From the IMG/VR virus record IMGVR_UViG_3300032562_000003, positions 62,001 to 126,000 of that record: a stretch of 64,000 bases of DNA. The stretch is one strand, 5' to 3'. Below, in pieces: positions 10,953 through 28,947 of the stretch; positions within the stretch are counted from its first letter, which is position 1; each line of letters starts with the position of its first letter. The position numbers and the translations under genes were made by a program. The notes beneath the pieces were generated by a model. That model was not told where the DNA came from. It worked only from the letters and a program-made list of their open reading frames with translations, and searched no databases.

Positions 10953-12197
10953 TTAGCCGAAAGTAAACAACGAACTAAATGTACTATTAGTATTGGTGTC
11001 ATATCTGATTTTCCAATCTAACACACCTAACAGGTTGTCTATCTTTTCATCCACTAGTTTACGTTCCATATCAAGATCATCGAATGGTAGTTCTAGGAAC
11101 CATTTTGGAAGTCGTAATTCATCGGTGGGATATGCGATTGAAGTAATACCTAAGGGATTTGATTTTAGTGTACACACCACAACCTTCATGCCGTCGACAA
11201 TTTTTTGGCTGTACTGGTCGCTATTCATCTTACGCAGTTGATTGTAGTGAATGGCGGCCTTAGCATGACCAACACTGCACTTACCGGTTCTCTCATACTT
11301 AATGGTATGATTTGTCAAATTATTAACTGATTTAGGTGAACCCTTAGTCCAACTGTCTTGTTCTGAAAGCTTTCTTTTAAACTCTTTGATCTTTTCGATC
11401 ACTTCGTCTCGGCCCTTACCCTCTTGAATTACCATACAAAGAATTTCCATAAGAAATTCCTGAACGTACTTAGGTGTATCTGCACGCTTTAGGTCTAGAC
11501 CCATAGCTTTGATTTCACCTAATTTACCTTCCTTATCCTTGCGTTTACCTTCTTTGTCGAAGATGTTGATTGCGTAACGCTTCTTTGTAATAAAGATAGA
11601 ACGATCACCGATCAATTCTCTACCAGCTTTGATGACCTCACCGTTCTTGCGGGGACAATGGAACGCTTTCTCCATGAAAGCAGGAAAGCTAGCGTTAGTT
11701 TGCTCTGCGATGTTGTCGTACAGTTCGATGCAAACTTCCTTGTTCCATTCTATTTCACCTTGTTCGATTCTATCTTTTAATATAGAATATGCAGTGAAGT
11801 AGCAGGAGTCAGTATCACCGTAGATGATCGCCTCACCTTCGTGAGTGTATTCACCTGCAATGATTTCATTGATCTGGCTCATCATGTGCCTAACAATTTG
11901 ACGACCAGACAAAGTAACTGACTGTCCGATCCGCTTATCATAAAACCTGCAATATTCGTTCAAAATGGATCCATATGTAGAGTTCAAGAGAATTTTTTTT
12001 ACTAACTGTCGTTTGTCCCAATACTCCATTGCTAACCCCCAAACTGATTTATATGCTTCCATTGGATGAATGGAGCGGTCTCGTATTTCTAATCCGAAAC
12101 CAGTTATGTATTCAACAAGACCAATTTTGTCTTTGTTTTGAATAAAATCATTCACTTTATTAGTATCGTATTCCAATATAATTTTCGTTAGATTCAT
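10953..12197 (-). CDS. polB: DNA polymerase B, C-terminal subunit (motifs B and C)
   Basis: EYWDKRQLVKKILLNSTYGS, IIYGDTDSCY, KKRYA and KAMGLDLKRADTP. Confidence 0.93.
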   Translation of the reverse strand: MNLTKIILEYDTNKVNDFIQNKDKIGLVEYITGFGLEIRDRSIHPMEAYKSVWGLAMEYWDKRQLVKKILLNSTYGSILNEYCRFYDKRIGQSVTLSGRQIVRHMMSQINEIIAGEYTHEGEAIIYGDTDSCYFTAYSILKDRIEQGEIEWNKEVCIELYDNIAEQTNASFPAFMEKAFHCPRKNGEVIKAGRELIGDRSIFITKKRYAINIFDKEGKRKDKEGKLGEIKAMGLDLKRADTPKYVQEFLMEILCMVIQEGKGRDEVIEKIKEFKRKLSEQDSWTKGSPKSVNNLTNHTIKYERTGKCSVGHAKAAIHYNQLRKMNSDQYSQKIVDGMKVVVCTLKSNPLGITSIAYPTDELRLPKWFLELPFDDLDMERKLVDEKIDNLLGVLDWKIRYDTNTNSTFSSLFTFG

Positions 12198-12251
12198 ATT
12201 TTTGCTCTATAAGATAAATACATATGGTGCTTTTTTAAAGGAGAGTCGTAT

Positions 12252-13151
12252 ATGGTGGATTGTGCTATTTGTAACAAAGAAATGAAACGAGTGACTAGTA
12301 GTCATTTAAAAACTCACAATATAACTACGGCTGAATACTTAGCGCAATTTCCAGGATCTGTTTTATTTTCTGATGAGCTAAGGCATGCATACGGAAAACA
12401 CGCGAGAGATAACAACCCAATGCATGATCCAGTTAGTGTAGAAAAAGTAAGAAACGCATTAACTGGTAAACGAAAAACAGAGGAACATAAACAAAAATTA
12501 TCAACCGCACGAACCGGAGTATCTTGGGGAACCCACACACCTGAACATAAAGAATACATGAAGGTTGTCAGCAAGATTAATATGGAAGAGAGAATAGCCA
12601 ATGGATGGAAACAGAAACCGTGGACTGCGGAGAGAAGAGCCAAACAGTCTACTAAAATGATAGGAAATACCATTGGGTTAGGCGGCTCCGGAAATAAGGG
12701 TAAAAAGCTTGATCTATCAGATAACCAACGACGCAATAGGAGTAAAAAACGAGTAGAATTCATGTCTAAGAACGATACTCCTAAAAAACATACTTCTATT
12801 GAATTGTCGTTTATTGAATTTTGCAAGAATAATGATATATTGTACATTCATCAGCATCCTATACATACTGAAAAGGGTAGTTGGTTATTTGATTTCTTAT
12901 TACCAAATCTAAATTTACTAGTAGAAGTTGATGGTGAATATTGGCACACATCTAAAAGACAAATAAATCGAGATTTAATAAAAAATAACGTGGCATTGGC
13001 AAGCGGACATACAATATTGCGCTTATCAGACACTAACCTTGATTTCTCCTTTATCTTCGGCAGCAAGGATGCAATCATTTCGCATACTAATGGCATAATG
13101 GAAAGTAGGATTCAATCGGTAAAAAAATCATCAGGTAAAGATTTACCATAG
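12252..13151 (+). mobile_element. Antisense homing-type endonuclease (Vsr/DUF559-like PD-(D/E)XK, with zinc finger and NUMOD3-like repeats)
   Basis: CAIC...HLKTH, FDFLLPNLNLLVEVDGEYWH and RDLIKN. SD AAGGAG and TAAATA (12215-12220) lie upstream. Confidence 0.85.
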
Positions 13152-14791
13152 AGTATTTCTCTAACTGCGTATTGTTTTTTCTGAAGTTTTTTACGTTCAG
13201 TATACCACCGAGAAAGTAGTCCTGGAATCACTCCTTCTTTTTCGTAAGTAAAGATGGTACCATTTGCTGAAAGGATCCATGGTCTGTTACTGTCGAAGAT
13301 CATCTTCCAAATTTCAGCAGCAGACATTTGTACACTTCTACCATCTTCATAGTCTATCCAAAGGGTAGTTCCGCGTTCTTGATTCATGATTGCTGTATAC
13401 TCAATTGAGCCAAACAATCCTTCCCACAGAATTGCACCAATGACGCCTTCTTCCTCGCTGTCATCTCCGAACTTTTTCTTCTTCTTGTTCTTCTTTTCAG
13501 AAGCCAATCTCATGCTCTTTTCGTGCATGTATTGGTCAGTCAGTGTTTGACGAACTTGACCTATGATGGTTTCCGGAGACATGTTCAGCGCTCGAATGTC
13601 AGACGGATACAGAGAGTTGATGTCAACTGCACCAGGATATTCGTGCATTCCTTGTTTAGGAATAGCAACAAACGCACCAGCTGCCGGAAACCCAGTATCT
13701 TCTTTGGGCTTCTTGTTAGGTACGATCATTCCACGTGCGTGAGCTTCATTGAAGATAGCCATTTCGATCATCTGCACCGAACCCATAACTGTCGGAAGAA
13801 GTACGCTATTCTCGTGTGCTAGTGCGTTAGCAAGATCAAGGAACTTTAGCTTATTGTGAATTTTAACCATAAGCATCGTGTCTTGTCTGTTATACTCCAC
13901 GAACGTTTTAAAGTCCTGATTGTATAACTGATCCAAACTGCCTTCGTACTGAGTTTTACGTTCACCTACTTCCATCTCACCGATAGCATCAAGAGAATAA
14001 CTATGACGAGACTCGTAGTTGTACTTCTTATACAGTTGAAGGTAGTCCATATGAATTCTACCAACTAGATCGTATGTTTCTTCTTCCTTGCCGAAACGTT
14101 CATAGGTACGAGTCTTAGGGAGTTTCCCCAGCAGACAAAACTTACGAGTATCGTTTTTAGACATGATTCTAGTAACGCGATTAACCGTATACGGAATGTC
14201 GTATCCCTCTGAGTTCCAGCCAGTTAGAATGTCAGCATCTTCGATCAACTCAAAGAAGGTTTCAAACATCTCTATTTCAGAACGAAACAGAAAGCAGTTT
14301 GGAAAATCTTTAGTTAACTCTTGCGCAGTTTCATCTGTCATGTGCTTAGGTGGCATGACCAACGTAATCAGTTGATCAAGCCAATCTAGATACATTGAGA
14401 TTGCAGTTACTGGATTGAACGGATCACTAGTAGGACTAAATCCTCGCTCAGGATCAAAGTCCACTTCAATGTCGAAAAAGCAAGTATGAAGCTTTGGTGG
14501 TTCAGCATTAAGGTAGTTATCAGCCAAACACCTAAATACTACGTTAACGTCGCTCTCAAATAGTTTTTTGTTACTATGTATTCTGCGTTCCTTCTCGAAT
14601 TCGCTACGTTTACGAGTAGAGAACCGAGACAGCGGATCACCGTAAATAGAACGATACTTTCCTTTAGGATCAGCATAGTACATTACGTAGTTCGTAGGGA
14701 ACTCTTTGTATGCACGTTTACCTTCAGGAGTACGTTCTACAACGTGGATTCGATCTGCGTTGGAATCTAATACTGCATCGACATATGCCAT
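13112..14791 (-). CDS. polB: DNA polymerase B, N-terminal subunit (3'-5' exonuclease and motif A)
   Basis: FFDIEVD, TGWNSEGYDIPY, YNRQDT, AVDINSLYPS and GLLSRWYTERKK. Confidence 0.95.
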   Translation of the reverse strand: MAYVDAVLDSNADRIHVVERTPEGKRAYKEFPTNYVMYYADPKGKYRSIYGDPLSRFSTRKRSEFEKERRIHSNKKLFESDVNVVFRCLADNYLNAEPPKLHTCFFDIEVDFDPERGFSPTSDPFNPVTAISMYLDWLDQLITLVMPPKHMTDETAQELTKDFPNCFLFRSEIEMFETFFELIEDADILTGWNSEGYDIPYTVNRVTRIMSKNDTRKFCLLGKLPKTRTYERFGKEEETYDLVGRIHMDYLQLYKKYNYESRHSYSLDAIGEMEVGERKTQYEGSLDQLYNQDFKTFVEYNRQDTMLMVKIHNKLKFLDLANALAHENSVLLPTVMGSVQMIEMAIFNEAHARGMIVPNKKPKEDTGFPAAGAFVAIPKQGMHEYPGAVDINSLYPSDIRALNMSPETIIGQVRQTLTDQYMHEKSMRLASEKKNKKKKKFGDDSEEEGVIGAILWEGLFGSIEYTAIMNQERGTTLWIDYEDGRSVQMSAAEIWKMIFDSNRPWILSANGTIFTYEKEGVIPGLLSRWYTERKKLQKKQYAVREILYGKSLPDDFFTD

Positions 14792-17173: not shown

Positions 17174-17734
17174 TTAAAAGTTGCGAGTATAGTTAACACC
17201 CAAGATGTCAGAGGTGACACTATTGCTACGAGTGCGATAGTAATTTACACCTACAATATTATCTTCGGTGATAGCAAAAGCGACACCGCCGTTAAGACGA
17301 TCTTCTGTAAAGGTAGGAGTGTTAGGTCCTTGACGATGACGATAACCAACGTTTACTGATACCGGGCCGTATACTTCATGCGAAACAGAAGCACCGTATC
17401 CCCAGAAGTTAAAGTCCTTATTAGTGTTCAGTGAACGGCCATACTCACCATAAGCAGCAGGAGTAAATCCTGCAACTGTGGGAAGTGCAGGGCCGCCTTG
17501 CAGCACGATCTTGCTGTTTAGAGTACCGTTATGATACGGTTGAGACCCGGTGAACTCGGCGCCGACATTAGCAATATTGGCAACAGTTTCACTATAGGTT
17601 AGACGATATTCAGTTGAGTTTGCTATCTTAGCAGGTTGCGGATCAATAGTACGAACTTCACCGGTGATAGATTCAGCAAGAGCCGGAGTAGCAACAGCCG
17701 CCGCAAGTGCTGCGATCAAGAATAACTTATTCAT
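17174..17734 (-). CDS. Outer-membrane beta-barrel protein
   Basis: Signal peptide ending ALA, alternating beta-strand pattern, and C-terminal VNYTRNF (BAM-type terminal Phe). Confidence 0.75.
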   Translation of the reverse strand: MNKLFLIAALAAAVATPALAESITGEVRTIDPQPAKIANSTEYRLTYSETVANIANVGAEFTGSQPYHNGTLNSKIVLQGGPALPTVAGFTPAAYGEYGRSLNTNKDFNFWGYGASVSHEVYGPVSVNVGYRHRQGPNTPTFTEDRLNGGVAFAITEDNIVGVNYYRTRSNSVTSDILGVNYTRNF

Positions 17735-17886: not shown

Positions 17887-19923
17887 TTACTTTGAAGTTG
17901 CCCTATACACTCCATCCCAGTTAACTGGTGGATTCTTAGCATATTCCTCTATACGGTCAATCATTTCCGTGTAGTACTTGTTTAGCTCTCCGCTCCAGAA
18001 CTTCTTCATATTAGAAGCATATGTTCTAGCAGAGTCCCATTCACCCTTACGATAGCTATCCAAGAATCTCAAGTGTTGTTTTTCTCCCGATGCATCATAT
18101 GAAGATAGGACAGTATAGATGCGAGCCGGTTCAGTTTTTCCTTTGACTGCAATAAGATCAAGTTCTACTACCTGATATTCATCTCTCACGTATTCGGCAG
18201 TTTTTGGTCCGATGATGATTTTGACCCCGTACGGTTTAGATTGACCTTCGAGGCGAGATGCAAGATTGACGCCGTCCCCAAGACAAGTATAGTCAAACCG
18301 CTGAGTGCTACCCATATTACCAACAACCACAGTATCAGTATTAATACCGAGGCCCATTCCAAAAGCCGGGACTCCTTCCAGTGTAATCTCATCGTTAAAT
18401 CTCTCTAATGCCTTCATCATCTCAAACGCCGTCTTGACAGCATCCTTAGCGTGTTGTTGATTACTAAGAGGTGCATTCCAAAATGCCATCTGAGCATCAC
18501 CTATGTACTTATCGAGGGTGCCGTTGTTCTCTAGAATTGCTTTTGTCATCGCAGTCATATAGCGATTCATGATCTTTGTAAGACCTTGAACATCTTTGCC
18601 GTAATGTTCAGAAATAGTAGTAAATCCACGAACATCTGTAAACATAATAGAAAGTTCTCTAGAATCACCTCCAAGTTGTAATAGTTCTGGATTCTTTTGT
18701 AATTTTTCAACCATAGCTGGAGATAGATAAGTTCCAAATTGCTTTTTGATTTGTTGCTTCTGTAAGAATTCTGAGATAAACTTGATTGTATAAATGTGCA
18801 AATAAAGTATCATTGCAATAAGTGCATTAAATGTTACATCTATTAGAATATGATTATGATTAAACATATAAACGGGGAAGTAAAGATAAACACCAATAAG
18901 AGCTATAATCCAAACTACAGAGAATCTTACTTTAGATAACAAAATGATTCCGAGAGCCAATACTACTAAAAGTGCATAATCCAATATTCCAGCCCAGTTT
19001 GGAATAGAAACTGTATCTCCATTAATTAGAGTTTGAAGAAGACTAGCTTGAACTGCTTGTGGAAATTGTGCACCAACTGGAGTAGCTACTGGATTGGCCA
19101 CACCTGAAGCAGTTACACCAAGAATTACAATTTTATTAAGCAAATCTGGAGTTTTGTCTCCAATATCAAATTGAGTAAACTTATAGTTCCAGTTCACAAA
19201 TACTCTAGAGTACTCATCTGTTTTAATAGTATTGAATGATGGAATTCTTAAAGCTTCCACACCAGTCTCGTTAATCTTAGCTTGATAAGATGGATCACCG
19301 GAAATTGCTCTTAACATTTCCATAGAAAAAGATGGATAGTATTCACCTTGAGACATTGATAATAAAGGTACACGGCGAACAACACCATCAGATTCCGGTA
19401 AAGTAGAAGTTACACCAATACCAACAGCAGCATCTTGAAATTCTGAAATATTATTAAGAACTGAAGGATAATTTGGCAAAAACTGTGTAGTTTTACCATC
19501 TCCAATTATAGCCACACCAGTTTTACGAATATTTTGATTTGGCTTAGATTGCGTCGATAGTGTCTGAGATAAAATTATTGGATGCTGTTTTAAAGTAGCA
19601 GTAAGATTTTTGTCTGTATTAAATCTATCTGGTTCAGAAAAGATTATTGTATTTCCAATTACACCAACACGATGTAAATACAAATCGTTGATTATTTTAG
19701 AATAAGTTTCTCTTGGAAAAGGATATTGTCCATATTTCTCTATAGTCTTATCTGATATATTTGCAATTACAATCTGTTCAGACTGTTTTGCTGGACCACG
19801 CATAAGATAATCATAGTATTTTAATTTGATTGCATCTACCAAAAATGGATTGGATATTTTAATAGTAAGTAATAGAGCAAAAGTAATAATCGCAAGCCAA
19901 GGCGATAGAAGAATCTTTTTCAT
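17887..19923 (-). CDS. CHASE2-domain class III adenylate cyclase
   Basis: N-terminal TM, periplasmic CHASE2 (YGQYPFPR, DGVVRRVPL), three TMs, then FTDVRGFT, DKYIGD and GDGVNLASRLEG. Confidence 0.93.
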   Translation of the reverse strand: MKKILLSPWLAIITFALLLTIKISNPFLVDAIKLKYYDYLMRGPAKQSEQIVIANISDKTIEKYGQYPFPRETYSKIINDLYLHRVGVIGNTIIFSEPDRFNTDKNLTATLKQHPIILSQTLSTQSKPNQNIRKTGVAIIGDGKTTQFLPNYPSVLNNISEFQDAAVGIGVTSTLPESDGVVRRVPLLSMSQGEYYPSFSMEMLRAISGDPSYQAKINETGVEALRIPSFNTIKTDEYSRVFVNWNYKFTQFDIGDKTPDLLNKIVILGVTASGVANPVATPVGAQFPQAVQASLLQTLINGDTVSIPNWAGILDYALLVVLALGIILLSKVRFSVVWIIALIGVYLYFPVYMFNHNHILIDVTFNALIAMILYLHIYTIKFISEFLQKQQIKKQFGTYLSPAMVEKLQKNPELLQLGGDSRELSIMFTDVRGFTTISEHYGKDVQGLTKIMNRYMTAMTKAILENNGTLDKYIGDAQMAFWNAPLSNQQHAKDAVKTAFEMMKALERFNDEITLEGVPAFGMGLGINTDTVVVGNMGSTQRFDYTCLGDGVNLASRLEGQSKPYGVKIIIGPKTAEYVRDEYQVVELDLIAVKGKTEPARIYTVLSSYDASGEKQHLRFLDSYRKGEWDSARTYASNMKKFWSGELNKYYTEMIDRIEEYAKNPPVNWDGVYRATSK

Positions 19924-19942
19924 AGTATAATCCCCGTTTTAA

Positions 19943-21094
19943 TTATTTATTTGCTATATTAGTTTGAATTATAGTTATATGACCATTTGGTCTACCGGTT
20001 CCTGATGTTGGCCATTTCTGCTCAGAGAAGTTATAATAATCATAAGATCCGTCTTGTATTGTTGTAATATCTACACCAGTTGCTTTTGGTAAAACCACAG
20101 TAACAACTTCTAGTTTAGCTTGAGATAATAAAGAATATGCCCAACCAATTTGAATTTGTTTTTTCAAAAGTGGAGAAATATCTGTATATAAAGTCTGTTT
20201 TAATGGAGCATCAGAATTATATTCTTCATATACTTGTAATAATTCTGACGGAGTTGGAGTTCTTTGAAGAGCAGCAAACACTTGATTTAAATCATCCGTT
20301 CCAGTATTAGGATCTTGGTTATTGTCTGCGGCCGCCCCAGCTGGATTTACTTTATTCTTAATATCTTTTCTAGCTTGTGTTAATAGATTAGCTCCTCCTT
20401 CAAGAGAAGGAGTTGAAAGTTGAATATTATTATCTGCCGATCTTCCTTCCATACTAATTACTGATGGAGTGCTTGGGGGACCAGAAGATGTTTCTACGAC
20501 TGTAGCCTGGAATGGTTTATCCATTTTAACTACTCCAGCAGCAGTAGCTACTTCAATAGCTCCAGTTTCACATTCTTTATCCATTCTAATCTCACCATTA
20601 TTCATAAAGCATTCTGGAACTAAAATTACTGTAGTTCTTCCTACTTCATCTACAGACATAAGGAAATCTGTTCCACGAACAGCTATGGTGGCAGTTGGAG
20701 TTCTAATATCTACTGAATTTGGATTGTTGTGAGCAATTGCTCCGGAGGTATATCGTACTGTTCCTAAAGCTACTTTAAGTCCAAGTTTTCCTTTAGATTT
20801 CTCATTATCATCATATACAAAATCATCAATGACTAATTTACTATTTTCAGTAATGTTAACTTTAGTCTGATCATTAAATGTAATTCCAAACTTACCCTGA
20901 CTATTAGTTATGATGGTGTCCATCTTCTCTATACCTGAACTTTTATTTGCCGGTATAGTAGAAGATGAACGTTTTATTTGTCCGCCGCCTTTAAAATCTG
21001 TTATTGCACCAATACTAGCAAAAGCTGGAGTAGCTAACAGAAGAAAAAAACTAGTGGCCAGTCTTAATGTTAATGTTACCATTATTTCCAACAC
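19943..21094 (-). CDS. FecR-domain exported protein
   Basis: Signal peptide ending AFA; DQTKVNITENSKLVID and IRTPTATIAVRGTDF. Exact start uncertain. Confidence 0.85.
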   Translation of the reverse strand: MLEIMVTLTLRLATSFFLLLATPAFASIGAITDFKGGGQIKRSSSTIPANKSSGIEKMDTIITNSQGKFGITFNDQTKVNITENSKLVIDDFVYDDNEKSKGKLGLKVALGTVRYTSGAIAHNNPNSVDIRTPTATIAVRGTDFLMSVDEVGRTTVILVPECFMNNGEIRMDKECETGAIEVATAAGVVKMDKPFQATVVETSSGPPSTPSVISMEGRSADNNIQLSTPSLEGGANLLTQARKDIKNKVNPAGAAADNNQDPNTGTDDLNQVFAALQRTPTPSELLQVYEEYNSDAPLKQTLYTDISPLLKKQIQIGWAYSLLSQAKLEVVTVVLPKATGVDITTIQDGSYDYYNFSEQKWPTSGTGRPNGHITIIQTNIANK

Positions 21095-21857
21095 TTGTCA
21101 CATTAATAACAGTTTCAGTAGCTCCATATTGTTGTGTAGTAATAGCATTTCCAGTTCCTGTTAGATTTACATATAGACTGTGCCCATATGTGCCACCAAG
21201 GTCTGTTTGTGTAGTATTTAAAGTATTGTAATCACCAGATACTAAGATTGTTTGAGAAGCATTTGGTGAAATTGCAGACATTGTTAATGAGTTATTTCCA
21301 CCAGTAATATCAAGGGTAGTTGTAATATTAGCACCTGCACCATGATAATTTAGAGAATTACTATCACCTGTAAATCTAGCATTAAAGTTTAGACCGGTAC
21401 AACTCGCGTCGCCTAAACTACTTCCACAACGAATTAGAGCATAGTTGCTATTTCCAATTTGTTGAAGAGATAATGAAGCATTATCTGTTCCAGCAGTACC
21501 AGATACAACTGAGATTAGGGCTTCATTATTATTACCAGTTTGAATACCAATAATAGATTGGTTAGCTCCTCTCAAATATACAGGATCTGTAAAAGTACCA
21601 AAGATATTTGTCTGGCCAGTTTGTTTAATATTAATATTAACATTATCACCAGATTGATTAATATAAACATCATTTGTCGTTGACATACTATCAGCATTAT
21701 TTTGATTTGGTGAAGTTGCTATAATAGATGGTGCTGATGGCGCACCAGGTAATGCCGCAGTTGCTGGAGTTGCGGGACCAGTTGGCGATGCAGTTTGAGC
21801 TAATGCTGGTGTAGTAAATAGCATCGCCATTATTGCTAGTGTTTTTAATAGTTTCAT
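21051..21857 (-). CDS. Curlin-like repeat protein
   Basis: Signal peptide, Pro/Ala linker, and repeated QxGxxN (INQSGDN, KQTGQTN, IQTGNNN, QQIGNSN). Confidence 0.75.
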   Translation of the reverse strand: MKLLKTLAIMAMLFTTPALAQTASPTGPATPATAALPGAPSAPSIIATSPNQNNADSMSTTNDVYINQSGDNVNINIKQTGQTNIFGTFTDPVYLRGANQSIIGIQTGNNNEALISVVSGTAGTDNASLSLQQIGNSNYALIRCGSSLGDASCTGLNFNARFTGDSNSLNYHGAGANITTTLDITGGNNSLTMSAISPNASQTILVSGDYNTLNTTQTDLGGTYGHSLYVNLTGTGNAITTQQYGATETVINVTSVGNNGNINIKTGH

Positions 21858-22675
21858 TTGTGTTTCTCCTGTGTGGTTTTATAATGCCATAGCCCTATTT
21901 TTTCACCACTCTTTATTAATTCAACAACACCTGTTTCTATGGCAGATCGAATAGCATAATTTTCCGGCTCATTCTTAGTTTGTTGTGAATCTATTTCAAA
22001 AGCATTAGTTCCCTGATTAAAGAAAGTAAATGCGCTAATGCCTTCAGAAGTAGACAATAGATTCTTTTCTACAGATACTGAAGTAAGTACTTCTCCAGTC
22101 TGTACAGACACCAATCTCATATTAATTGTTACTTGATCTTGGATATACTGCGTGTTTGGTCCAATACCAAGATATCTAGCACCATTTCCTCCAGTTTTTA
22201 TAGAAGAATTATAATCTATAATTGCGCCTTCTAGCAATACTCCTGCAACTAAAAGTGGAGGAAGAGCTTGAGCCTTATCGCCTTGTTCTTGCTCTCTCAT
22301 TTGACGAATAAGTTGGCGCTCTTTTACTAAATCATCTAATCCTACTCTTTCAACTGGCTTAAACCATTTCCCATTTCCAGCTTCATAAAGTGCTTTTACA
22401 ACGTAAGCATCTGCTCCCTGAGTTACTGCGGTAGAAAATGAACTTACAGTTTGAGAAGGTTTTCTTTGACCAGTTTTATCAATAAATGAATATACCGCAA
22501 TTGGAATAGGTGTACCATCTAATTCTGGAATATTATCAAATATATGCGGTTGAGCTGTATGAGTTATCTTTGGTGAATCTTTTTGAAGAAAAGACTGGTT
22601 TAATGCCGGAATAGATCCACCTAAACAGCCAGATAGAAATACACAAAGAAATGGAACTATAATTATTCTCTTCAT
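21854..22675 (-). CDS. csgG: Curli secretion channel CsgG (lipoprotein)
   Basis: Lipobox LSGC; AVYSFIDKTGQRK, FSTAVTQGA, ERVGLDDLVKERQLIR and RLVSVQTGEVL. Confidence 0.92.
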   Translation of the reverse strand: MKRIIIVPFLCVFLSGCLGGSIPALNQSFLQKDSPKITHTAQPHIFDNIPELDGTPIPIAVYSFIDKTGQRKPSQTVSSFSTAVTQGADAYVVKALYEAGNGKWFKPVERVGLDDLVKERQLIRQMREQEQGDKAQALPPLLVAGVLLEGAIIDYNSSIKTGGNGARYLGIGPNTQYIQDQVTINMRLVSVQTGEVLTSVSVEKNLLSTSEGISAFTFFNQGTNAFEIDSQQTKNEPENYAIRSAIETGVVELIKSGEKIGLWHYKTTQEKHK

Positions 22676-23124
22676 CAGAATGCAAACGTTGCTATTGGAA
22701 CAGTAACTATAGTTTGATTTCCATTTGTATCTACAACTGTAAGTGTTACACTGGTTCCAGATTTAACATATGATATTGTATCACCAGACAAATTAAACAT
22801 TCCGGAATTAGAAGAACTAGTTCCAGAGAATAGATTATTTGATAGCTGTGTAGCCAATTGAGAATATACTTGGCTTGTGAACAAAGCTATAAATTTTGCG
22901 GTTGGAGTACTGGCAGCAGCATTTTGTTGAGCTATTATAGAATTTTGTTTTGCGGTAGCTATAGTTTGTTTAGCTGATTCTTCTTGTTGATATGTAGAAG
23001 TAGCAAACGTGCCATAGCTGACCCCATTAAATATAGGATCTTTAAATTGTTGAACTAACTCCGAAGCAAATGCCGAACTACTCAAGCACGATGCAAACAG
23101 AGAAAGTAGTATGATCTTCTTCAT
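22675..23124 (-). CDS. csgF: Curli assembly protein CsgF-like
   Basis: Signal peptide followed by SELVQQFKDPIFNG (CsgF N-terminus pattern), directly upstream of csgG. Confidence 0.8.
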   Translation of the reverse strand: MKKIILLSLFASCLSSSAFASELVQQFKDPIFNGVSYGTFATSTYQQEESAKQTIATAKQNSIIAQQNAAASTPTAKFIALFTSQVYSQLATQLSNNLFSGTSSSNSGMFNLSGDTISYVKSGTSVTLTVVDTNGNQTIVTVPIATFAF

Positions 23125-23174
23125 AATACATATCTCCAAATATACTAACTATCACTATCAGCAGCTTTCTTATC

Positions 23175-23483
23175 TTAGTCGGTCCTGTGATCAGACCTGC
23201 TTAACTGGTTAATTGCTTTTTCTGCTTCTACTCTTCCATACTCGATTGTCTTGCCGCGTAAATGCAACACTGTTTTGACTTTTTGGTTTAGTCTAATTAG
23301 ATCATTATCTAGCATTCTAATACGGTCTATAAGTGCGATCAAAGTTGTATTAGCTTCGCCCAGCACTGGTTTAACTTCTTTAGTAGCCCACTCCCATACA
23401 TAGAATATGAGATATCCCATACCGACCGCTGCTATGATCGGAAAACCGTACTTGTTTACTAGATCAGCTAAGTCAGATCCCAT
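23175..23483 (-). CDS. Small membrane protein (TM plus coiled coil)
   Basis: KYGFPIIAAVGMGYLI and LIDRIRMLDNDLIRL; paralog of the next ORF. Confidence 0.75.
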   Translation of the reverse strand: MGSDLADLVNKYGFPIIAAVGMGYLIFYVWEWATKEVKPVLGEANTTLIALIDRIRMLDNDLIRLNQKVKTVLHLRGKTIEYGRVEAEKAINQLSRSDHRTD

Positions 23484-23764
23484 TAATCTCTCCGTGCATC
23501 TGTTTTACCATCGGCGCGGGCTATTCTATCTATATCTGGTTCTAGCCCTAAAGCGTTAGAAACCATAGTGTCAATACGAATAACATCATGATTCATGGTT
23601 TTTACACGATTGTCAAGCGCCGTGATGATGCCAGCCATACCTTTGATACTACCGGTGACGCCGGCAAGTATGAATTTCAGTGTTAGGAATACGAAGTATC
23701 CTGCACCCATTGCGGCCGCAATAGGAAAACCAACATCAGCAATAAGTTTTAGGAAATTTCCCAT
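23483..23764 (-). CDS. Small membrane protein (TM plus coiled coil)
   Basis: DVGFPIAAAMGAGYFV and LDNRVKTMNHDVIRI; TAATG coupling to the previous ORF. Confidence 0.75.
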   Translation of the reverse strand: MGNFLKLIADVGFPIAAAMGAGYFVFLTLKFILAGVTGSIKGMAGIITALDNRVKTMNHDVIRIDTMVSNALGLEPDIDRIARADGKTDARRD

Positions 23765-23856
23765 CTCTATCTCTTTAAACACGAACATGCCATAGCACAA
23801 CTGTACTATGACACATTAGTATTTAGTCAAAATGGGTAAAAAAATCGCTGTATATA

Positions 23857-24135
23857 TTACAGCGACTGCAGGACCTTAGCGAAATCGTCCTTGCTGCGAA
23901 TAGCGATGTCTTGCAGACGCTCGCGATCCATGGGCTTAAGGCGAGAGAACTTGCTCATGAATTGAGTGATGATATGAGTGGGAACAACCGCCTTAGTGCC
24001 ATCCTTAAAAACAATCGGATAGTTGCCCTTCAGATCAAGAACCTTCTTGAACTGCATGACGATGTGGGGGACCTGATCTTGATCAGGATCCGAGACCGAG
24101 TCAACTTCATTTTGGAAATCGTCGTAGATGTTCAT
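23857..24135 (-). CDS. Hypothetical early protein
   Basis: 92-aa ORF with SD AGAGGA and a sigma70 promoter. Confidence 0.75.
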   Translation of the reverse strand: MNIYDDFQNEVDSVSDPDQDQVPHIVMQFKKVLDLKGNYPIVFKDGTKAVVPTHIITQFMSKFSRLKPMDRERLQDIAIRSKDDFAKVLQSL

Positions 24136-24203: not shown

Positions 24204-26474
24204 TTATATTCTTTTAAAAAGAACATCACCCTTAATAGGAGTAATTAACTTGCTTTTATTTTGATTAAGCATCCCTGTTTGAAGATGCTTCACGATTTCA
24301 GGAGTTAAATGTCTAGCACGAAGTTCACCTAATCCAAACATATGAACCTCTACCGGATCGTCACCTTCTAAATCTTGAATAGCCAATATACGGTTACGAC
24401 CTTCGTGTCCTACTATTCTAGCTGACTCGCTGAAATCACCGTCTTCCCATTCAACGGGAAAATCAAAAATTAAAAATGGTGAACCTAATGCTCCGCCGGC
24501 CTGCATATGTTGTTTTATATGCTCTACTGATACTGGTTTATCTAAAGGTAGTGCCAAAGATAAGAATGTGCTAGGACGCATAAGAACACGCATTCCTCTG
24601 TACGCTACATTCGCATTGTATCCAGTAGCACCAAGACCTTCACCATTTATGTCGTTATCAACTTTATACTCGTTTACTGGCGAAGGTGTTGATCTATGAT
24701 TATTAGCTATTACTTGCATAATAGCATTAAATTTGTTTACTCTATCTTCAAGACCATGCAGCCCTGCGTTAATTGGTTTAGTCGCAGCCTGAGTATTGTT
24801 GAAATTAGTAACCTTAGGTGCAACTCTGTTTTGCCAAAACCAAACAGCAACCCTGGCTGCAACGTTTGGTCGTTCAACAAGTTCAGGTTGCTGCTCTAAT
24901 GGTAAACCTAAGGCTTTTCCTACCTTACGGTAATTTTCTCTACCTGTTAATTGAATGAATCCTCGCCCGTGATATCGTGCACCATCTCCTGGATGTGTGT
25001 TACCCAATAGCTTTGCTTTTTCTGGATTATATTTAGGATCATATTTCTTAAAATCTAATTTTCCGCCAAACTCTTTTAGTGACGAAAAATTTTGTGTCTC
25101 ATGTGCGCATTGTGCCAGAAACTGCGCAAGTTCGGTTCCGGTGATGCCAGCTGCCTGTGCTGCTCGTCTAAGTGCTACACCATATGGGTTAGTTAACCCG
25201 GACAGCGTTTGCTTTACTACAGCAGGATCAACCTTAGGTAATTGCACCTGATGTGATACCGGCATGTGTGGCGTAACTGGTTCTACTGTCTTGTTGGGCA
25301 TACCGTGCATACCCAAAGCTAATCCTGCAGCTACGCCCATACCTTTAGCGGCTGATTTCCAGTCTTCGTCTAATTCACTTGTAGAATTATCTTTGACTAG
25401 TGCCTTCTCTAATTTAGGATCAAGGGTAATTGCTAGCTTAACTGTATTAGGATTTGGATTTTTAATAAGTAGAATAGCAGCAGGATATTCGGTGACTGCT
25501 ATTTTTTGTACTTCCAGTGAAGGATTCTTGATGACCTGAATTGCGTCCGGAACTTCAATTACAATATCTCTTAATACCTTTTCATTTGGTTGAGGGTTCA
25601 TGCATCTCAATACAGAAGGACTATATACTGCTGCATCTACTAATAATCGATCCGGTATTTTAGATACATCTACATTATTACTAACTAGTTCTGAGATATA
25701 ATCATATGTATATTTGGTATTATTGATAAAAAGTAGATCCTTTTCTATAGATAAATCACGATCCACGTAGCTTCTCGGGCCGTATAACCAATCCTTTACG
25801 CGAGTTACTGCGCTAGAGTGCGGTACTCTAGCTAATTCAATTTTATCCTTTTTTTGTAAAGCTAGGTTGAGTAATTTTTCTGAAGATAACTTAGTTTCTG
25901 CTGCAAATGAACTGTGAGAAATTTCGTCATCCTCTGCATCAAAATATTGAGTATCCCCGTCGTATTCTGATCCTCGCATAGTGTTGTCAGAAGGCATTAG
26001 GTTGGTTACCGTGTGTGACGCGATTGCCCACTTGGCGCCGGACTGTTTATTGATACAATATATTAAAATAGATTCATCTTGATAGAAGTGTTGTTCAAAA
26101 TGACCTGGAGCACGTTTGGCTGTGCACCAATCAGTATTTTTACCATAGAAACAACTTGCATCTTTATCTAGAGGAACAATGACAAGCCACTTGTCATTGT
26201 CAACCAATGTAATACTTTTTCCAGGAATCTTTCCGCGCTTTAGTTGTCTTTTTGTTCTTGATGGATCGATAGAATTTACAAACTGCGTAAACTCACTAAA
26301 GGACTTCTTTCCCCACCAGTCAATATTTCGCTCAGTGCCACTAACTTGATTTTTGTTGACGAGTTCCTTAAAGGCGGCGATGGCTCTTTGTACATCCTCT
26401 GCAGGTACTCCTGAGTTAATATATTTCTGCGCTACTTCTTTGTAGCCCTCAGCGATGAATTCTGTTACTCGCAT
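24204..26474 (-). CDS. Multidomain protein: PcfJ-like, helical repeats, GH19 lysozyme-like and ParB-like
   Basis: SCFYGKNTDWCTA; KNP repeats; AQFLAQCAHET...YHGRGFIQLTGRENY; C-terminal IVGHEGRNR. Confidence 0.8.
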   Translation of the reverse strand: MRVTEFIAEGYKEVAQKYINSGVPAEDVQRAIAAFKELVNKNQVSGTERNIDWWGKKSFSEFTQFVNSIDPSRTKRQLKRGKIPGKSITLVDNDKWLVIVPLDKDASCFYGKNTDWCTAKRAPGHFEQHFYQDESILIYCINKQSGAKWAIASHTVTNLMPSDNTMRGSEYDGDTQYFDAEDDEISHSSFAAETKLSSEKLLNLALQKKDKIELARVPHSSAVTRVKDWLYGPRSYVDRDLSIEKDLLFINNTKYTYDYISELVSNNVDVSKIPDRLLVDAAVYSPSVLRCMNPQPNEKVLRDIVIEVPDAIQVIKNPSLEVQKIAVTEYPAAILLIKNPNPNTVKLAITLDPKLEKALVKDNSTSELDEDWKSAAKGMGVAAGLALGMHGMPNKTVEPVTPHMPVSHQVQLPKVDPAVVKQTLSGLTNPYGVALRRAAQAAGITGTELAQFLAQCAHETQNFSSLKEFGGKLDFKKYDPKYNPEKAKLLGNTHPGDGARYHGRGFIQLTGRENYRKVGKALGLPLEQQPELVERPNVAARVAVWFWQNRVAPKVTNFNNTQAATKPINAGLHGLEDRVNKFNAIMQVIANNHRSTPSPVNEYKVDNDINGEGLGATGYNANVAYRGMRVLMRPSTFLSLALPLDKPVSVEHIKQHMQAGGALGSPFLIFDFPVEWEDGDFSESARIVGHEGRNRILAIQDLEGDDPVEVHMFGLGELRARHLTPEIVKHLQTGMLNQNKSKLITPIKGDVLFKRI

Positions 26475-28503: not shown

Positions 28504-28947
28504 TTATGCCCTTGAAATTTTTAGTATGGAACGAAGCATCCATTGATGTTTACCGTGGGCGTCAATTCTCTCCGCGATAAAGTTAGCAATACCTTGCTCA
28601 TCTGCATCTTCTGCTACGTGAAATGCTGCCTTATACATCGCAAGCATTTTGGCATTATCTTCAAAAAGTTCTTTCATCATTAATTCGGCGCGGGGAACTT
28701 TAGTTTGGTCTGCGATTTGACTAAGTTCTGAAAAACGAATGAGACTGCCCGGAGTGTATTCATCAACTTGACGAATTATTTCTGCCAGTCTATCAATCGT
28801 ATTGTCATACACTTCTTCATAGTAGTTACCGAAAAATTCATGGTATTGGGGAAAATCCGGAGTTTCTACATTCCAGTGAAAGAATTGAGCTTTGATCGAT
28901 AGTGCATACGCGGATGCCAATAGTGTCTTAAGAGTATCTGCTAACAT
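28504..28947 (-). CDS. dps: Dps/ferritin-like protein
   Basis: FHWNVE..F..HEFF...Y, IDRLAEIIR and HGKHQWMLRS. Confidence 0.9.
   Translation of the reverse strand: MLADTLKTLLASAYALSIKAQFFHWNVETPDFPQYHEFFGNYYEEVYDNTIDRLAEIIRQVDEYTPGSLIRFSELSQIADQTKVPRAELMMKELFEDNAKMLAMYKAAFHVAEDADEQGIANFIAERIDAHGKHQWMLRSILKISRA

What the first reader, a model, noticed from the sequence alone, without database searches (positions are those of the whole stretch)
17887..23124. Phage curli secretion genes joined to a FecR protein and a CHASE2 adenylate cyclase
Seen: csgF-csgG-curlin-FecR-cyclase is tightly coupled and looks more AT-rich than its flanks. The cyclase keeps both metal Asp (FTD, IGD), the ATP-specifying Lys and the catalytic Asn/Arg (VNLASR). 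No csgE was recognised. Established: curli genes are reported in pelagimyophages, and CHASE2 cyclases are periplasmic-sensing cAMP producers. Inference: an envelope-spanning circuit in which amyloid export or contact is relayed through FecR to phage-controlled cAMP, reprogramming host CRP-type regulation or aggregating infected cells. I know of no experimental description of this coupling.
Basis: partly seen in the sequence, partly recalled or inferred. Interest (0 to 1): 0.8.

Follow-up and report, generated by a model that had tools for sequence, protein, structure and literature searches.

The report
Phage curli–FecR–adenylate cyclase gene module
A large freshwater phage carries a known phage gene set: curli amyloid secretion genes joined to a FecR-domain protein and a membrane-sensor adenylate cyclase. 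The set is real and intact, but it was already described in marine phages and its function is still untested.

Summary
On the minus strand, CsgF (22675-23124), CsgG, a curlin-repeat protein, a secreted FecR-domain protein and a CHASE2 class III adenylate cyclase (17887-19923) overlap or lie 19 nt apart. All cyclase catalytic motifs are present. The block is AT-rich: GC3 is 0.15-0.26 against 0.35±0.05 for the other genes.

It is not new. The same order is annotated in the cultured phages HTVC008M and Melnitz. Wittmers et al. 2022 (PMC9599517) described it as the pelagiphage "T8SS region" with FecR and adenylate cyclase. No experimental test was found.

What this window adds:
- The carrier is a lake-water jumbo phage (contig of 259 kb or more), not a marine pelagiphage.
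- The module is larger than reported. Two small membrane proteins (23175-23788) always accompany it, and a small outer-membrane barrel (17174-17734) often does.
- At least 600 viral contigs encode a relative of the cyclase, and the order is kept in the 80 best loci fetched.
- Among 80 bacterial relatives of the cyclase, 28 have a FecR-domain neighbour and none has CsgG or CsgF nearby.
- FecR is inherited with CsgF-CsgG-curlin as a swappable cassette of two old types. The cyclase and the small membrane genes have separate histories.

The relay model (curlin → FecR → cAMP) is therefore only partly supported.

The parts
23843..23867 (-). Terminator-like hairpin (10 pairs, then TTTTT) just upstream of the module. 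Probably the end of the preceding transcription unit.
   Evidence: Consensus scan. A pattern match only, not shown to function.
23483..23788 (-). Small membrane protein 'tm105' (101 aa from the ATG; one N-terminal hydrophobic segment, helical and charged C-terminus). First gene of the conserved module. Corresponds to the gene labelled 'histidine kinase' in the pelagiphage literature.
   Evidence: PHROG 18771, unknown function, E 8e-34. Among 50,697 phage records, relatives occur only in the curli-bearing phages HTVC008M and Melnitz. Linked to the module in every complete locus. No kinase domain found at E≤10. Hydropathy.
23175..23483 (-). Small membrane protein 'tm102', a paralogue of tm105 (about 28% identity). 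Overlaps tm105 by 1 nt.
   Evidence: Same PHROG 18771, E 3e-30. Its N-terminal GFPII... segment parallels that of tm105 but stays below the 1.6 hydropathy cut-off. Synteny.
22675..23124 (-). CsgF homologue (149 aa) with a signal peptide. The N-terminal F-x-x-P-x-F-x-G motif is kept.
   Evidence: Pfam CsgF E 3e-13, covering profile positions 6-132 of 132. PHROG 35372. Motif present in 42 of 44 relatives.
21854..22675 (-). CsgG homologue (273 aa), an outer-membrane lipoprotein channel with an L-S-G-C lipobox. In the constriction loop, the residues aligned to E. coli Tyr51 and Asn55 are Ser, Phe56 is kept, and there is one extra residue.
   Evidence: Pfam CsgG E 7e-52. E 3e-45 to E. coli CsgG 3X2R/6L7A, with alignment. 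Loop variants by cassette type. The E. coli residue numbering is from memory.
21051..21857 (-). Curlin-repeat (CsgA/B-like) secreted protein, 268 aa: signal peptide, about 40 aa of Pro/Ala-rich linker, then about 8-9 Q/x-G-x-x-N strand-turn-strand repeats.
   Evidence: Own Curlin_rpt hit only E 0.55. 27 of 41 orthologues hit Curlin_rpt. Invariant periodic Q/G/N columns. AlphaFold pLDDT 77, 18 strands. Foldseek against PDB gave no significant match.
19943..21082 (-). Secreted FecR-domain protein, 379 aa: cleavable-looking signal peptide, FecR domain at aa 59-159 (numbered from the GTG start at 21094; about 55-155 from the ATG at 21082), then a poorly modelled C-terminal half. It has no N-terminal anti-sigma domain. 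Overlaps the curlin gene by 32 nt.
   Evidence: PF04773 E 2e-11. PHROG 37870 E 2e-68. 5321 relatives at E≤1e-5 among the 8,000 candidates scored. Hydropathy. AlphaFold model poor, pLDDT 50.
17887..19923 (-). Receptor adenylate cyclase, 678 aa: TM1 (aa 5-23), periplasmic CHASE2 (aa 18-324 = nt 18952-19872), three TM segments (aa 311-377), class IIIb cyclase domain (aa 423-598 = nt 18130-18657), and a C-terminal extension of about 70 aa.
   Evidence: Pfam CHASE2 3e-37 and Guanylate_cyc 9e-20. Alignment to CyaB 3R5G and others. Hydropathy. PHROG 35576 E 9e-235. Catalytic motifs invariant.
17174..17734 (-). Small outer-membrane β-barrel-like protein, 186 aa, with a signal peptide and a C-terminal Phe. 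An optional downstream member of the module, 152 nt after the cyclase.
   Evidence: Language-model neighbours are viral OMP_b-brl (PF13505) clusters of about 180 aa, scores 0.97-0.98. Found after the cyclase in the 'ttFGARCO' architecture: 8 complete loci plus partial ones. No Pfam or PHROG hit of its own. GC 0.456, unlike the module.

Best explanation
This is a freshwater jumbo-phage copy of the phage 'T8SS region' already known from marine pelagiphages and a methylophage. It is a host-envelope remodelling module built from three separately exchangeable pieces.

1. Two small inner-membrane proteins of unknown role.
2. A cassette of CsgF, CsgG, a curlin-repeat subunit and a secreted FecR-domain protein. 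During infection this cassette most likely installs a CsgG/CsgF channel in the host outer membrane and exports a phage-encoded amyloid-type fibre subunit. The FecR-domain protein would act as a periplasmic accessory of that secretion system. No CsgE is encoded.
3. A CHASE2 receptor adenylate cyclase that makes cAMP in the cytoplasm under control of its periplasmic domain, sometimes followed by a small outer-membrane barrel.

Shown: gene identities, export signals, intact catalytic and channel motifs, purifying selection, conserved order, single viral origin of the cyclase, and cassette-like inheritance of FecR with the Csg genes.

Inferred: that fibres are made, that cAMP is produced and what it controls, and that the pay-off is cell aggregation, 'sibling capture' or surface masking, as proposed for pelagiphages. 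FecR has ties to both halves. In bacteria it sits next to CHASE2 cyclases, and in phages it travels with CsgFG-curlin. It is therefore the most plausible physical link, but the direction of any signal is unresolved.
For: - Identities.
- The same six- to eight-gene order is found in HTVC008M and Melnitz and in the literature (PMC9599517).
- Order in 82 loci: ttFGARAC 25, ttFGARC 14, ttFGARCO 8 (the window's type), and the remainder are truncated or have the tm pair moved downstream.
- At least 600 viral stretches encode a cyclase relative.
- The tm genes occur only in curli-bearing phages among 50,697 phage records.
- Viral cyclases form one clade (SH-aLRT 99), sister to a mainly alphaproteobacterial clade.
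- The catalytic domain is 85% conserved against 63% for CHASE2, and the motifs are invariant.
- Among 80 bacterial relatives of the cyclase, none has CsgG or CsgF within 10 kb. 28 have a FecR-domain ORF nearby, 10 of them immediately upstream on the same strand.
- Pairwise-identity correlations: FecR with CsgG 0.84, with curlin 0.84, with CsgF 0.72, but with CHASE2 0.24 and with the tm genes 0.12-0.14.
- All four combinations of tm-type (α/β) and cassette type (A/B) exist. AU tests reject congruence: p 8e-136, 6e-10 and 1e-4.
- Curlin evidence.
Against: - No experiment exists for any phage copy. The Melnitz authors saw no clumping of infected cells (PMC9004378).
- The window's curlin misses the Pfam threshold by itself, and its model has no significant structural match.
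- The CsgG constriction loop is altered, so the channel may behave differently from E. coli CsgG.
- The co-variation analysis is descriptive. The loci are related, and the groups were defined from identity matrices before testing.
- Cassette co-inheritance can reflect where recombination is tolerated rather than who binds whom.
- No cAMP receptor was found in the 64-kb window, and the host is unknown.
- No RNA run could be listed, so expression in lakes is not shown.
Confidence: 0.55

Rival explanations
1. Curlin export or fibre contact is sensed by the periplasmic FecR protein, which acts on the CHASE2 domain and switches phage-controlled cAMP synthesis. The cAMP then reprograms host CRP-type regulation.
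For: - The FecR gene sits directly before the cyclase gene with a 19-nt gap.
- FecR-domain genes neighbour homologous CHASE2 cyclases in 28 of 80 bacterial loci. They also neighbour CHASE2 histidine kinases in Burkholderiales and P. aeruginosa (PMC5192318).
- In S. meliloti, deleting CHASE2 from CyaD1 gives constitutive cAMP (PMC5498481).
- The cyclase is intact.
Against: - FecR proteins of cassette types A and B are only 27-34% identical, yet both work beside CHASE2 domains that are 65-81% identical.
- The FecR-CHASE2 correlation is only 0.24, and the two have incongruent trees.
- S. meliloti SMc02177 (FecR domain) is a downstream cAMP-Clr target and is dispensable for signal perception.
- In most relatives a second curlin gene separates FecR from the cyclase.
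- No cAMP-binding protein was seen in the window.
Confidence: 0.2
2. Lysis-timing device. CsgG/CsgF form a gated outer-membrane pore (secretin- or pinholin-like) that, with the small membrane proteins, helps time or execute lysis. The cyclase sets the timing. This was proposed for Melnitz.
For: - The module lies directly downstream of a 756-aa GH19/endolysin-like gene.
- The two small single-pass membrane proteins resemble holin- or spanin-sized proteins.
- The hypothesis is stated in PMC9004378.
Against: - A curlin-repeat substrate gene is conserved in every complete locus, often twice.
- The CsgF coupling motif is conserved.
- In other backbones the module sits in unrelated neighbourhoods without the GH19 gene upstream.
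- A separate holin-family hit exists elsewhere in the window.
Confidence: 0.1
3. Uptake or iron-signalling device. An ungated CsgG pore imports cofactors or siderophores, and FecR acts as in the Fec system to signal iron status.
For: There is no CsgE gate. The FecR name and the import idea are raised in PMC9599517.
Against: - The protein has a signal peptide in place of the cytoplasmic anti-sigma domain and transmembrane helix that FecR-type anti-sigma factors have.
- No ECF sigma factor or TonB-dependent transducer gene is adjacent.
- FecR-domain proteins pair with CHASE2 sensors in non-iron contexts.
- Absence of CsgE is normal for alphaproteobacterial curli systems (PMC3521004).
Confidence: 0.05
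4. No functional unit. The cyclase and the curli genes are independent auxiliary genes that sit together only because they landed in the same hypervariable region.
For: The three pieces have different histories. The region is described as hypervariable in pelagimyophages (PMC7029224).
Against: - Adjacency and order persist down to 38-39% cyclase identity, in at least two very different phage backbones, in both marine and fresh water. This holds despite recombination at the junctions.
- Wittmers et al. report near 1:1 abundance ratios of the components across ocean stations.
Confidence: 0.1

Closest known systems
Pelagiphage 'T8SS (curli) region' of Wittmers et al. 2022 (PMC9599517); the annotated copies in Pelagibacter phage HTVC008M and Methylophilales phage Melnitz
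   Same: - The gene order matches: two small genes, then CsgF, CsgG, curlin-repeat protein, FecR-domain protein, (curlin 2), adenylate cyclase.
- The proteins are homologous: cyclase 38-40%, CsgG 45%, tm105 53-55% identity.
- The cyclases form one viral clade.
- There is no CsgE, CsgC or CsgD.
   Different: - The source is lake water, not ocean.
- The carrier is a contig of 259 kb or more, whose polB is closest (45%) to jumbo phages such as Phosso, PA5oct and Atu_ph07. It is not a 140-150 kb kyanovirus or a podovirus.
- The second curlin gene is absent and a small outer-membrane barrel follows the cyclase.
- The literature label 'histidine kinase' for the small genes is not reproduced here.
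Bacterial curli system (E. coli csgBAC/csgDEFG; alphaproteobacterial variants, Dueholm et al. 2012)
   Same: It has a CsgG lipoprotein channel (E 3e-45 to solved structures), CsgF, and a curlin-repeat subunit with a signal peptide. Like alphaproteobacterial systems, it lacks CsgC, CsgD and CsgE.
   Different: - It is phage-borne.
- A FecR-domain protein and a cyclase are embedded in the operon. Neither CsgG nor CsgF was found next to any of 80 bacterial relatives of the cyclase.
- The constriction-loop residues aligned to Tyr51 and Asn55 are replaced.
- There is one curlin gene here rather than a CsgA/CsgB pair.
Sinorhizobium meliloti CyaD1 (SMc02176) – SMc02177 (FecR domain) – SMc02178 – Clr cAMP cascade
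   Same: It has a CHASE2 receptor adenylate cyclase of the same TM-CHASE2-3TM-cyclase build beside an extracytoplasmic FecR-domain protein, in an alphaproteobacterial lineage. The bacterial sister clade of the viral cyclases is mainly alphaproteobacterial.
   Different: There is no curli secretion system in that locus. A Crp-family receptor (Clr) is encoded next door, and none was found in this window. There the FecR-domain gene is an output of cAMP-Clr, not a sensor.
Burkholderia 'BiofilmReg' operon and P. aeruginosa PA4035/PA4036-type pairs (LysM-FecR protein + CHASE2 histidine kinase)
   Same: A secreted FecR-domain protein is encoded immediately next to a CHASE2 sensor, and the operon is linked to biofilm formation (PMC5192318).
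   Different: The output is a histidine kinase and response regulator, not a cyclase. The FecR protein carries LysM. There is no CsgG or CsgF, and the system is chromosomal in bacteria.

Membership tests
Phage T8SS-FecR-cyclase region (pelagiphage type) | CsgF, CsgG and a curlin-repeat gene, in that order, on a phage genome | tested here: met
   Phage context.
Phage T8SS-FecR-cyclase region (pelagiphage type) | Preceded by one or two small genes (called 'HK' in the literature) | tested here: met
   tm105 and tm102 are homologous to the genes upstream of CsgF in HTVC008M and Melnitz, at 53-55% identity. No kinase domain was detected.
Phage T8SS-FecR-cyclase region (pelagiphage type) | FecR-domain gene after the curlin gene and an adenylate cyclase at the end | tested here: met
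   The viral cyclases are monophyletic.
Phage T8SS-FecR-cyclase region (pelagiphage type) | Second curlin-repeat gene between FecR and the cyclase (frequent, not universal) | tested here: not met
   The window has a 19-nt gap there. 25 or more of the related loci have the extra gene.
Curli type VIII secretion system | CsgG outer-membrane lipoprotein channel | tested here: met
   Pfam 7e-52; E 3e-45 to 3X2R/6L7A; lipobox present.
Curli type VIII secretion system | CsgF | tested here: met
   Pfam 3e-13, near full-length. No hit to solved CsgF chains by sequence.
Curli type VIII secretion system | Curlin-repeat subunit (CsgA/B) | tested here: inconclusive
   The window copy scores E 0.55. 27 of 41 orthologues pass. 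The repeat pattern and a β-strand repeat model are present. Foldseek gave no significant match.
Curli type VIII secretion system | CsgE periplasmic gate/adaptor; CsgD regulator; CsgC | tested here: not met
   No such family in or beside the cluster. These are also absent in alphaproteobacterial systems.
Curli type VIII secretion system | Formation of extracellular amyloid fibres | not testable with these tools
   Needs expression with ThT/Congo red staining or electron microscopy.
Class III (IIIb) adenylate cyclase | Two metal-binding Asp, the adenine-specifying Lys and Thr, and the transition-state Asn and Arg | tested here: met
   D430, D476, K472, T546, N553 and R557 align with CyaB 3R5G motifs and are conserved across relatives. 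The assignment of roles to these residues is from established knowledge of class III cyclases.
Class III (IIIb) adenylate cyclase | cAMP synthesis | not testable with these tools
   Needs cya complementation or an enzyme assay.
CHASE2 receptor cyclases (CyaD1 type) | TM - periplasmic CHASE2 - three TM - cytoplasmic output domain | tested here: met
   Pfam CHASE2 covers 6-253 of 257. Hydrophobic segments at aa 5-23, 311-329, 336-354 and 359-377.
FecR-type anti-sigma factor (Fec/FpvR class) | N-terminal cytoplasmic anti-sigma domain and transmembrane helix before the FecR domain | tested here: not met
   The FecR domain begins at about aa 59, right after a signal-peptide-like segment ending AFA|S.
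FecR-type anti-sigma factor (Fec/FpvR class) | Adjacent ECF sigma factor and TonB-dependent transducer genes | tested here: not met
   The neighbours are the curlin gene and the cyclase. No such families are in the flanking genes.

The most novel reading that the evidence does not exclude
The secreted FecR-domain protein stands in for the missing CsgE. It is a periplasmic adaptor that belongs to the CsgF-CsgG-curlin machine and also touches the CHASE2 domain. The four-gene cassette exists in at least two ancient, serotype-like types (A and B; CsgG 40-46% and FecR 27-34% identical between types). These types are shuffled among phage backbones, while the cyclase and the two small membrane proteins are kept. 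The module would then be a phage-assembled system that couples surface-fibre production to second-messenger output and has no bacterial counterpart. Its persistently AT-rich exported half (lower GC3 than the flanks in 40 of 40 loci) would mark continual cassette traffic between phages.
Probability: 0.2. Interest if true: 0.65.

Novelty: new member of a known kind. Interest (0 to 1): 0.35.

Why it matters
Phage-encoded curli secretion is one of the more puzzling auxiliary functions of abundant aquatic phages. Its purpose has been open since 2013-2020, with sibling capture, superinfection shielding, import and lysis timing all proposed.

This window shows the module is not a marine SAR11/OM43 peculiarity. 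It is very common in IMG/VR: at least 600 contigs carry the cyclase, and thousands of FecR relatives exist. It reaches lake-water jumbo phages.

The cassette analysis narrows what to test. FecR should be tested first as a partner of CsgG, CsgF or curlin, and the cyclase as a separately inherited unit.

If fibres and cAMP are really produced, infected cells of very abundant freshwater and marine bacteria would change their surface and signalling state. That could affect aggregation, carbon export and phage-phage competition.

Tried and rejected
- **AlphaFold model of the FecR protein.** From a 26-sequence alignment it was poor (pLDDT 50, pTM 0.34), so I did not use it for fold search. The nature of its C-terminal half stays unknown.
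- **Foldseek of the curlin model against PDB.** No match at E≤0.001. The top hits are assorted β-helix proteins, FapC and CsgA fibrils at E 0.05-2. This is consistent with a solenoid but proves nothing.
- **First structure-prediction submissions.** I rebuilt the alignments without those rows and did not send those sequences to that tool.
- **RNA evidence.** No RNA run could be listed, so I did not use read laying.
- **Rfam and tRNA scans of the window.** Nothing found.
- **The listing of cluster members.** It gave no names.
- **Sigma-70 promoter scan.** Not above shuffled expectation (36 against 29±5).
- **Recent horizontal transfer as the sole cause of AT-richness.** Rejected, because the same GC3 dip occurs in 40 of 40 related loci. 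The window's dip is unusually deep, so a recent cassette import is still possible.
- **Histidine kinase identity of the small genes.** Not supported.
- **Search for bacterial CsgG-FecR linkage.** Protein searches return only the closest hits, which are viral.

Full report
**1. What is in the sequence**

All genes of interest lie on the minus strand. Pfam identifies four of them:
- CsgF, 22675-23124 from the ATG (the longest ORF starts at a TTG at 23139): E 3e-13.
- CsgG, 21854-22675: E 7e-52.
- A FecR-domain protein, 19943-21082 from the ATG: PF04773, E 2e-11.
- A 678-aa protein with CHASE2 (E 3e-37) and a class III cyclase domain (E 9e-20), 17887-19923.

Independent gene calls in public assemblies use the same starts. 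The junctions are a 1-nt overlap, a 4-nt overlap, a 32-nt overlap and a 19-nt gap, so the genes are tightly coupled.

Export signals:
- CsgG has an L-S-G-C lipobox.
- CsgF, the third protein and the FecR protein begin with signal-peptide-like segments.
- The cyclase has one hydrophobic segment before CHASE2 and three after it. This places CHASE2 in the periplasm and the catalytic domain in the cytoplasm.

**2. The cyclase**

It aligns over the whole catalytic domain with P. aeruginosa CyaB (3R5G, E 6e-30), Spirulina CyaC entries and a bacteriophytochrome-cyclase fusion. The motifs FTD, DKYIGD, YTCLGDGVNLASR and VKGK match. By established knowledge of class III cyclases, these supply the two metal Asp, the Lys/Thr adenine pair and the Asn/Arg transition-state pair.

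The motifs are unchanged in 42 of 42 freshwater relatives. The catalytic domain is much more conserved than the sensor: median 85% identity to the window against 63%.

**3. The 'curlin'**

The 268-aa protein at 21051-21857 does not reach the Pfam Curlin_rpt threshold by itself (E 0.55). The evidence that it is a curlin is indirect:
- 27 of 41 positional orthologues do reach the threshold (best 2e-8).
- The family alignment shows invariant Q, G and N columns recurring every 22-27 residues.
- An AlphaFold model from 39 sequences has 18 regular strands after a disordered, Pro/Ala-rich N-terminus (pLDDT 77, pTM 0.72).

Foldseek against PDB gave no significant hit. I call it a divergent curlin-repeat protein. 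The fold is supported only qualitatively.

**4. AT-richness**

The five genes have GC 0.348-0.360 and GC3 0.15-0.26. The 54 other genes of the window have GC 0.402±0.025 and GC3 0.351±0.051 (Mann-Whitney p 1.4e-4). The dip stops inside the cyclase gene: the CHASE2/TM part has GC 0.323 and the catalytic part 0.415. It does not include the two small upstream genes or the downstream barrel gene.

The pattern is family-wide:
- In 40 of 40 related loci with enough flank, the CsgF-to-FecR block has lower GC3 than the flanking genes (mean -0.064).
- The CHASE2 part does so in 35 of 40 loci.
- The catalytic part does not.

These loci are related, so the counts are descriptive. The window's dip (-0.17) is the deepest seen.

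**5. Context**

The window is viral.
- It matches IMG/VR contigs at 100%, one of them 258,859 bp long. The identical FecR protein is on a contig of 314 kb.
- The sequence is held in full by 20 lake-water or freshwater metagenome runs.
- The split family-B polymerase is closest (45%) to jumbo phages such as Phosso, PA5oct and Atu_ph07.
- A GH19/endolysin-like protein lies just upstream.
- The window also encodes ClpB-like, DnaJ, Cpn10, PhoH, ferritin and 7-deazaguanine-pathway-type enzymes.

**6. This module is already known**

Protein searches of 50,697 phage records find the cyclase, CsgG and the small upstream protein only in Pelagibacter phage HTVC008M and the Methylophilales phage Melnitz isolates. 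There are two exceptions: a partial cyclase-domain hit (23% identity) in two Acinetobacter phage records, and a CsgG-like hit in a 1.5-kb Salmonella phage record.

Their GenBank annotations read as follows:
- HTVC008M: CsgF, CsgG, curlin-associated protein, hypothetical, hypothetical, adenylate/guanylyl cyclase.
- Melnitz: CsgF, CsgG, curlin repeat protein, FecR domain protein, curlin repeat protein, adenylate/guanylate cyclase.

The literature covers it too:
- Zaragoza-Solas et al. 2020 reported the curli cluster and proposed 'sibling capture'.
- Buchholz et al. 2022 proposed a lysis-timing pore and saw no clumping.
- Wittmers et al. 2022 described exactly this region: 'HK', CsgF, CsgG, CsgA/B, FecR, a second CsgA/B and the cyclase. 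They found it in marine podo- and myo-pelagiphages, stated that FecR and the cyclase are not in bacterial T8SS operons, inferred an alphaproteobacterial origin with cross-family transfer, and found transcripts in ocean data.

I found no paper on freshwater or jumbo-phage copies and no experimental test.

**7. Extent and conservation of the module**

In the 80 best loci plus the two isolates, every locus with enough flank has the same order. In the code below, t is a small membrane gene, F CsgF, G CsgG, A curlin, R FecR, C cyclase and O the outer-membrane barrel.
- ttFGARAC: 25 loci.
- ttFGARC: 14 loci.
- ttFGARCO (the window's form): 8 loci.
- A few loci have the tt pair moved downstream and inverted.

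The module therefore includes tm105 and tm102 (23175-23788), both in PHROG 18771 of unknown function. It often includes a 186-aa outer-membrane-barrel-like protein (17174-17734). That protein's nearest language-model neighbours are viral OMP_b-brl clusters.

The 'histidine kinase' label is not reproduced: no kinase family hits at E≤10. A terminator-like hairpin at 23843-23867 precedes tm105.

**8. Bacterial relatives**

The 80 best bacterial loci encoding a relative of the cyclase (30-35% identity) are mostly Alphaproteobacteria. Profile searches of their ±10 kb find no CsgG or CsgF. A FecR-domain ORF is present in 28 loci. Ten of these sit immediately upstream on the same strand, and several of those proteins are giant. 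Seven are divergent within 2.5 kb.

This fits published FecR-CHASE2 pairs:
- LysM-FecR plus a CHASE2 histidine kinase in Burkholderiales and P. aeruginosa.
- SMc02177 beside the CHASE2 cyclase CyaD1 in S. meliloti.

On a tree rooted with distant paralogues, all viral cyclases, marine and freshwater, form one clade (SH-aLRT 99). It is sister to a mainly alphaproteobacterial clade (97). The join of a FecR/CHASE2-cyclase pair with a CsgFG-curlin system therefore looks phage-specific in this sample and arose once on the cyclase side.

**9. Who travels with whom**

I compared pairwise identities among 44 distinct complete modules.
- One block is CsgF, CsgG, curlin and FecR, with Spearman correlations of 0.72-0.84 among themselves.
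- A second block is the two tm genes and CHASE2, with correlations of 0.72-0.91.
- FecR against CHASE2 gives 0.24. FecR against the tm genes gives 0.12-0.14.

The identity matrices show two old cassette types. Types A and B are 40-46% identical in CsgG and 27-34% identical in FecR. That is as far apart as either is from the marine phages. They sit beside CHASE2 domains that are 65-81% identical and catalytic domains that are 80-92% identical.

All four combinations of tm-type (α/β) and cassette type exist. AU tests reject three forced groupings:
- α as a clade on the CsgG+FecR tree: ΔlnL 848, p 8e-136.
- Type B as a clade on the cyclase tree: p 6e-10.
- α as a clade on the cyclase tree: p 1e-4.

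The groups were defined from identity data beforehand, and the loci are related. Even so, the incongruence is very large. Recombination evidently falls between tm102 and CsgF and between FecR and the cyclase, not inside CsgF-FecR. The window carries a type A cassette on an α backbone.

CsgG constriction loops also differ by type. Type A keeps the Phe aligned to E. coli Phe56 but has Ser at the positions aligned to Tyr51 and Asn55. Type B has a charged loop with Ile.

**10. Reading**

The identity of the module is secure. For mechanism, I favour two coupled units.
- A secretion and fibre cassette that includes FecR as its periplasmic accessory. There is no CsgE, which is also the case in alphaproteobacterial curli systems.
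- A separately inherited CHASE2 cyclase.

FecR is the only component with ties to both halves: it is a neighbour of CHASE2 cyclases in bacteria and is co-inherited with CsgFG-curlin in phages. It remains the best candidate for a physical link.

The direction 'FecR informs the cyclase' is not supported by the co-variation. In S. meliloti the FecR-domain neighbour is an output of cAMP-Clr and is dispensable for signal perception. No strong match to a cAMP-binding family appeared among the window's remaining ORFs, though only the best 25 of 36 families were listed and the window is a quarter of the genome. What the fibres or cAMP achieve is not addressed by any data here.

**11. Verdict**

This is a new member of a known kind, in a new habitat and a new type of phage, lacking the second curlin gene and carrying an added barrel gene. 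It is not a new system. The useful additions are:
- the true extent of the module;
- its very wide distribution;
- the absence of Csg genes next to bacterial relatives of the cyclase;
- the cassette structure that ties FecR to the secretion genes.

Noticed in passing
window 10953-14791: The family-B DNA polymerase is split into two minus-strand ORFs: 13112-14791 (exonuclease and N-terminal polymerase) and 10953-12197 (C-terminal polymerase). Between them lies a plus-strand 299-aa ORF (12252-13151) with a weak PvuRts1I-like endonuclease N-domain hit (E 5e-5, below the Pfam cut-off). The layout is identical on an independent contig (L166). This may be a mobile endonuclease insertion.
   Followed up: partly
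window 24204-26474: A 756-aa protein with a GH19 (chitinase class I / endolysin PHROG 181) domain in its C-terminal half lies directly upstream of the module. In other phage backbones the module has different upstream neighbours (Tet_JBP, GmrSD_N, DruA in L163).
   Followed up: partly
window 17174-17734: The small outer-membrane-barrel-like gene after the cyclase has the highest GC (0.456) of all 54 comparison genes. It sits next to the lowest-GC genes of the window. Homologues (34-39% identity) appear before or after the module in other lineages.
   Followed up: partly
L001-L082 (related viral loci): The CsgF-to-FecR block and the CHASE2-coding part of the cyclase gene have lower GC3 than flanking genes in 40 of 40 and 35 of 40 loci. 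This holds across backbones whose flank GC3 ranges from 0.22 to 0.54. The catalytic part and the small tm genes do not show it. The cause is unknown; it could be cassette traffic from AT-rich phages or codon constraints on exported proteins.
   Followed up: partly
L082:6935-8986 (Melnitz cyclase): The Melnitz cyclase has Ser in place of the transition-state Asn (VSTAAR instead of VNLASR) and Asp in place of the specificity Thr. The HTVC008M and freshwater copies keep the Asn. The Melnitz enzyme may differ in activity.
   Followed up: no
L081:5598-6923 (HTVC008M): The second curlin-repeat protein of HTVC008M also carries a PA14 domain (E 2.7e-6), a carbohydrate-binding or adhesion module. This fits a surface-adhesive role for the fibre proteins.
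   Followed up: no
window 23175-23788: The two small genes that the literature labels 'histidine kinase' show no kinase domain. They are paralogous proteins of about 100 aa, tm105 with a clear N-terminal hydrophobic segment, in PHROG 18771 of unknown function, with only a faint YvrJ-like hint. Their sequence divergence tracks that of the CHASE2 domain (Spearman 0.72-0.75), although the cassette lies between them.
   Followed up: partly
window 28504-28947, 39818-42082 and other ORFs: The window also encodes a ferritin-like protein and a 754-aa ClpB/ClpA-like double-AAA protein. ORFs I did not map individually gave hits to PhoH, GTP cyclohydrolase I, 6-pyruvoyl-tetrahydropterin synthase, radical SAM, DnaJ, Cpn10, a sigma-70 region 4 protein and a GTA-type 3-TM holin. 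No tRNA and no Rfam family was found in the 64 kb.
   Followed up: no
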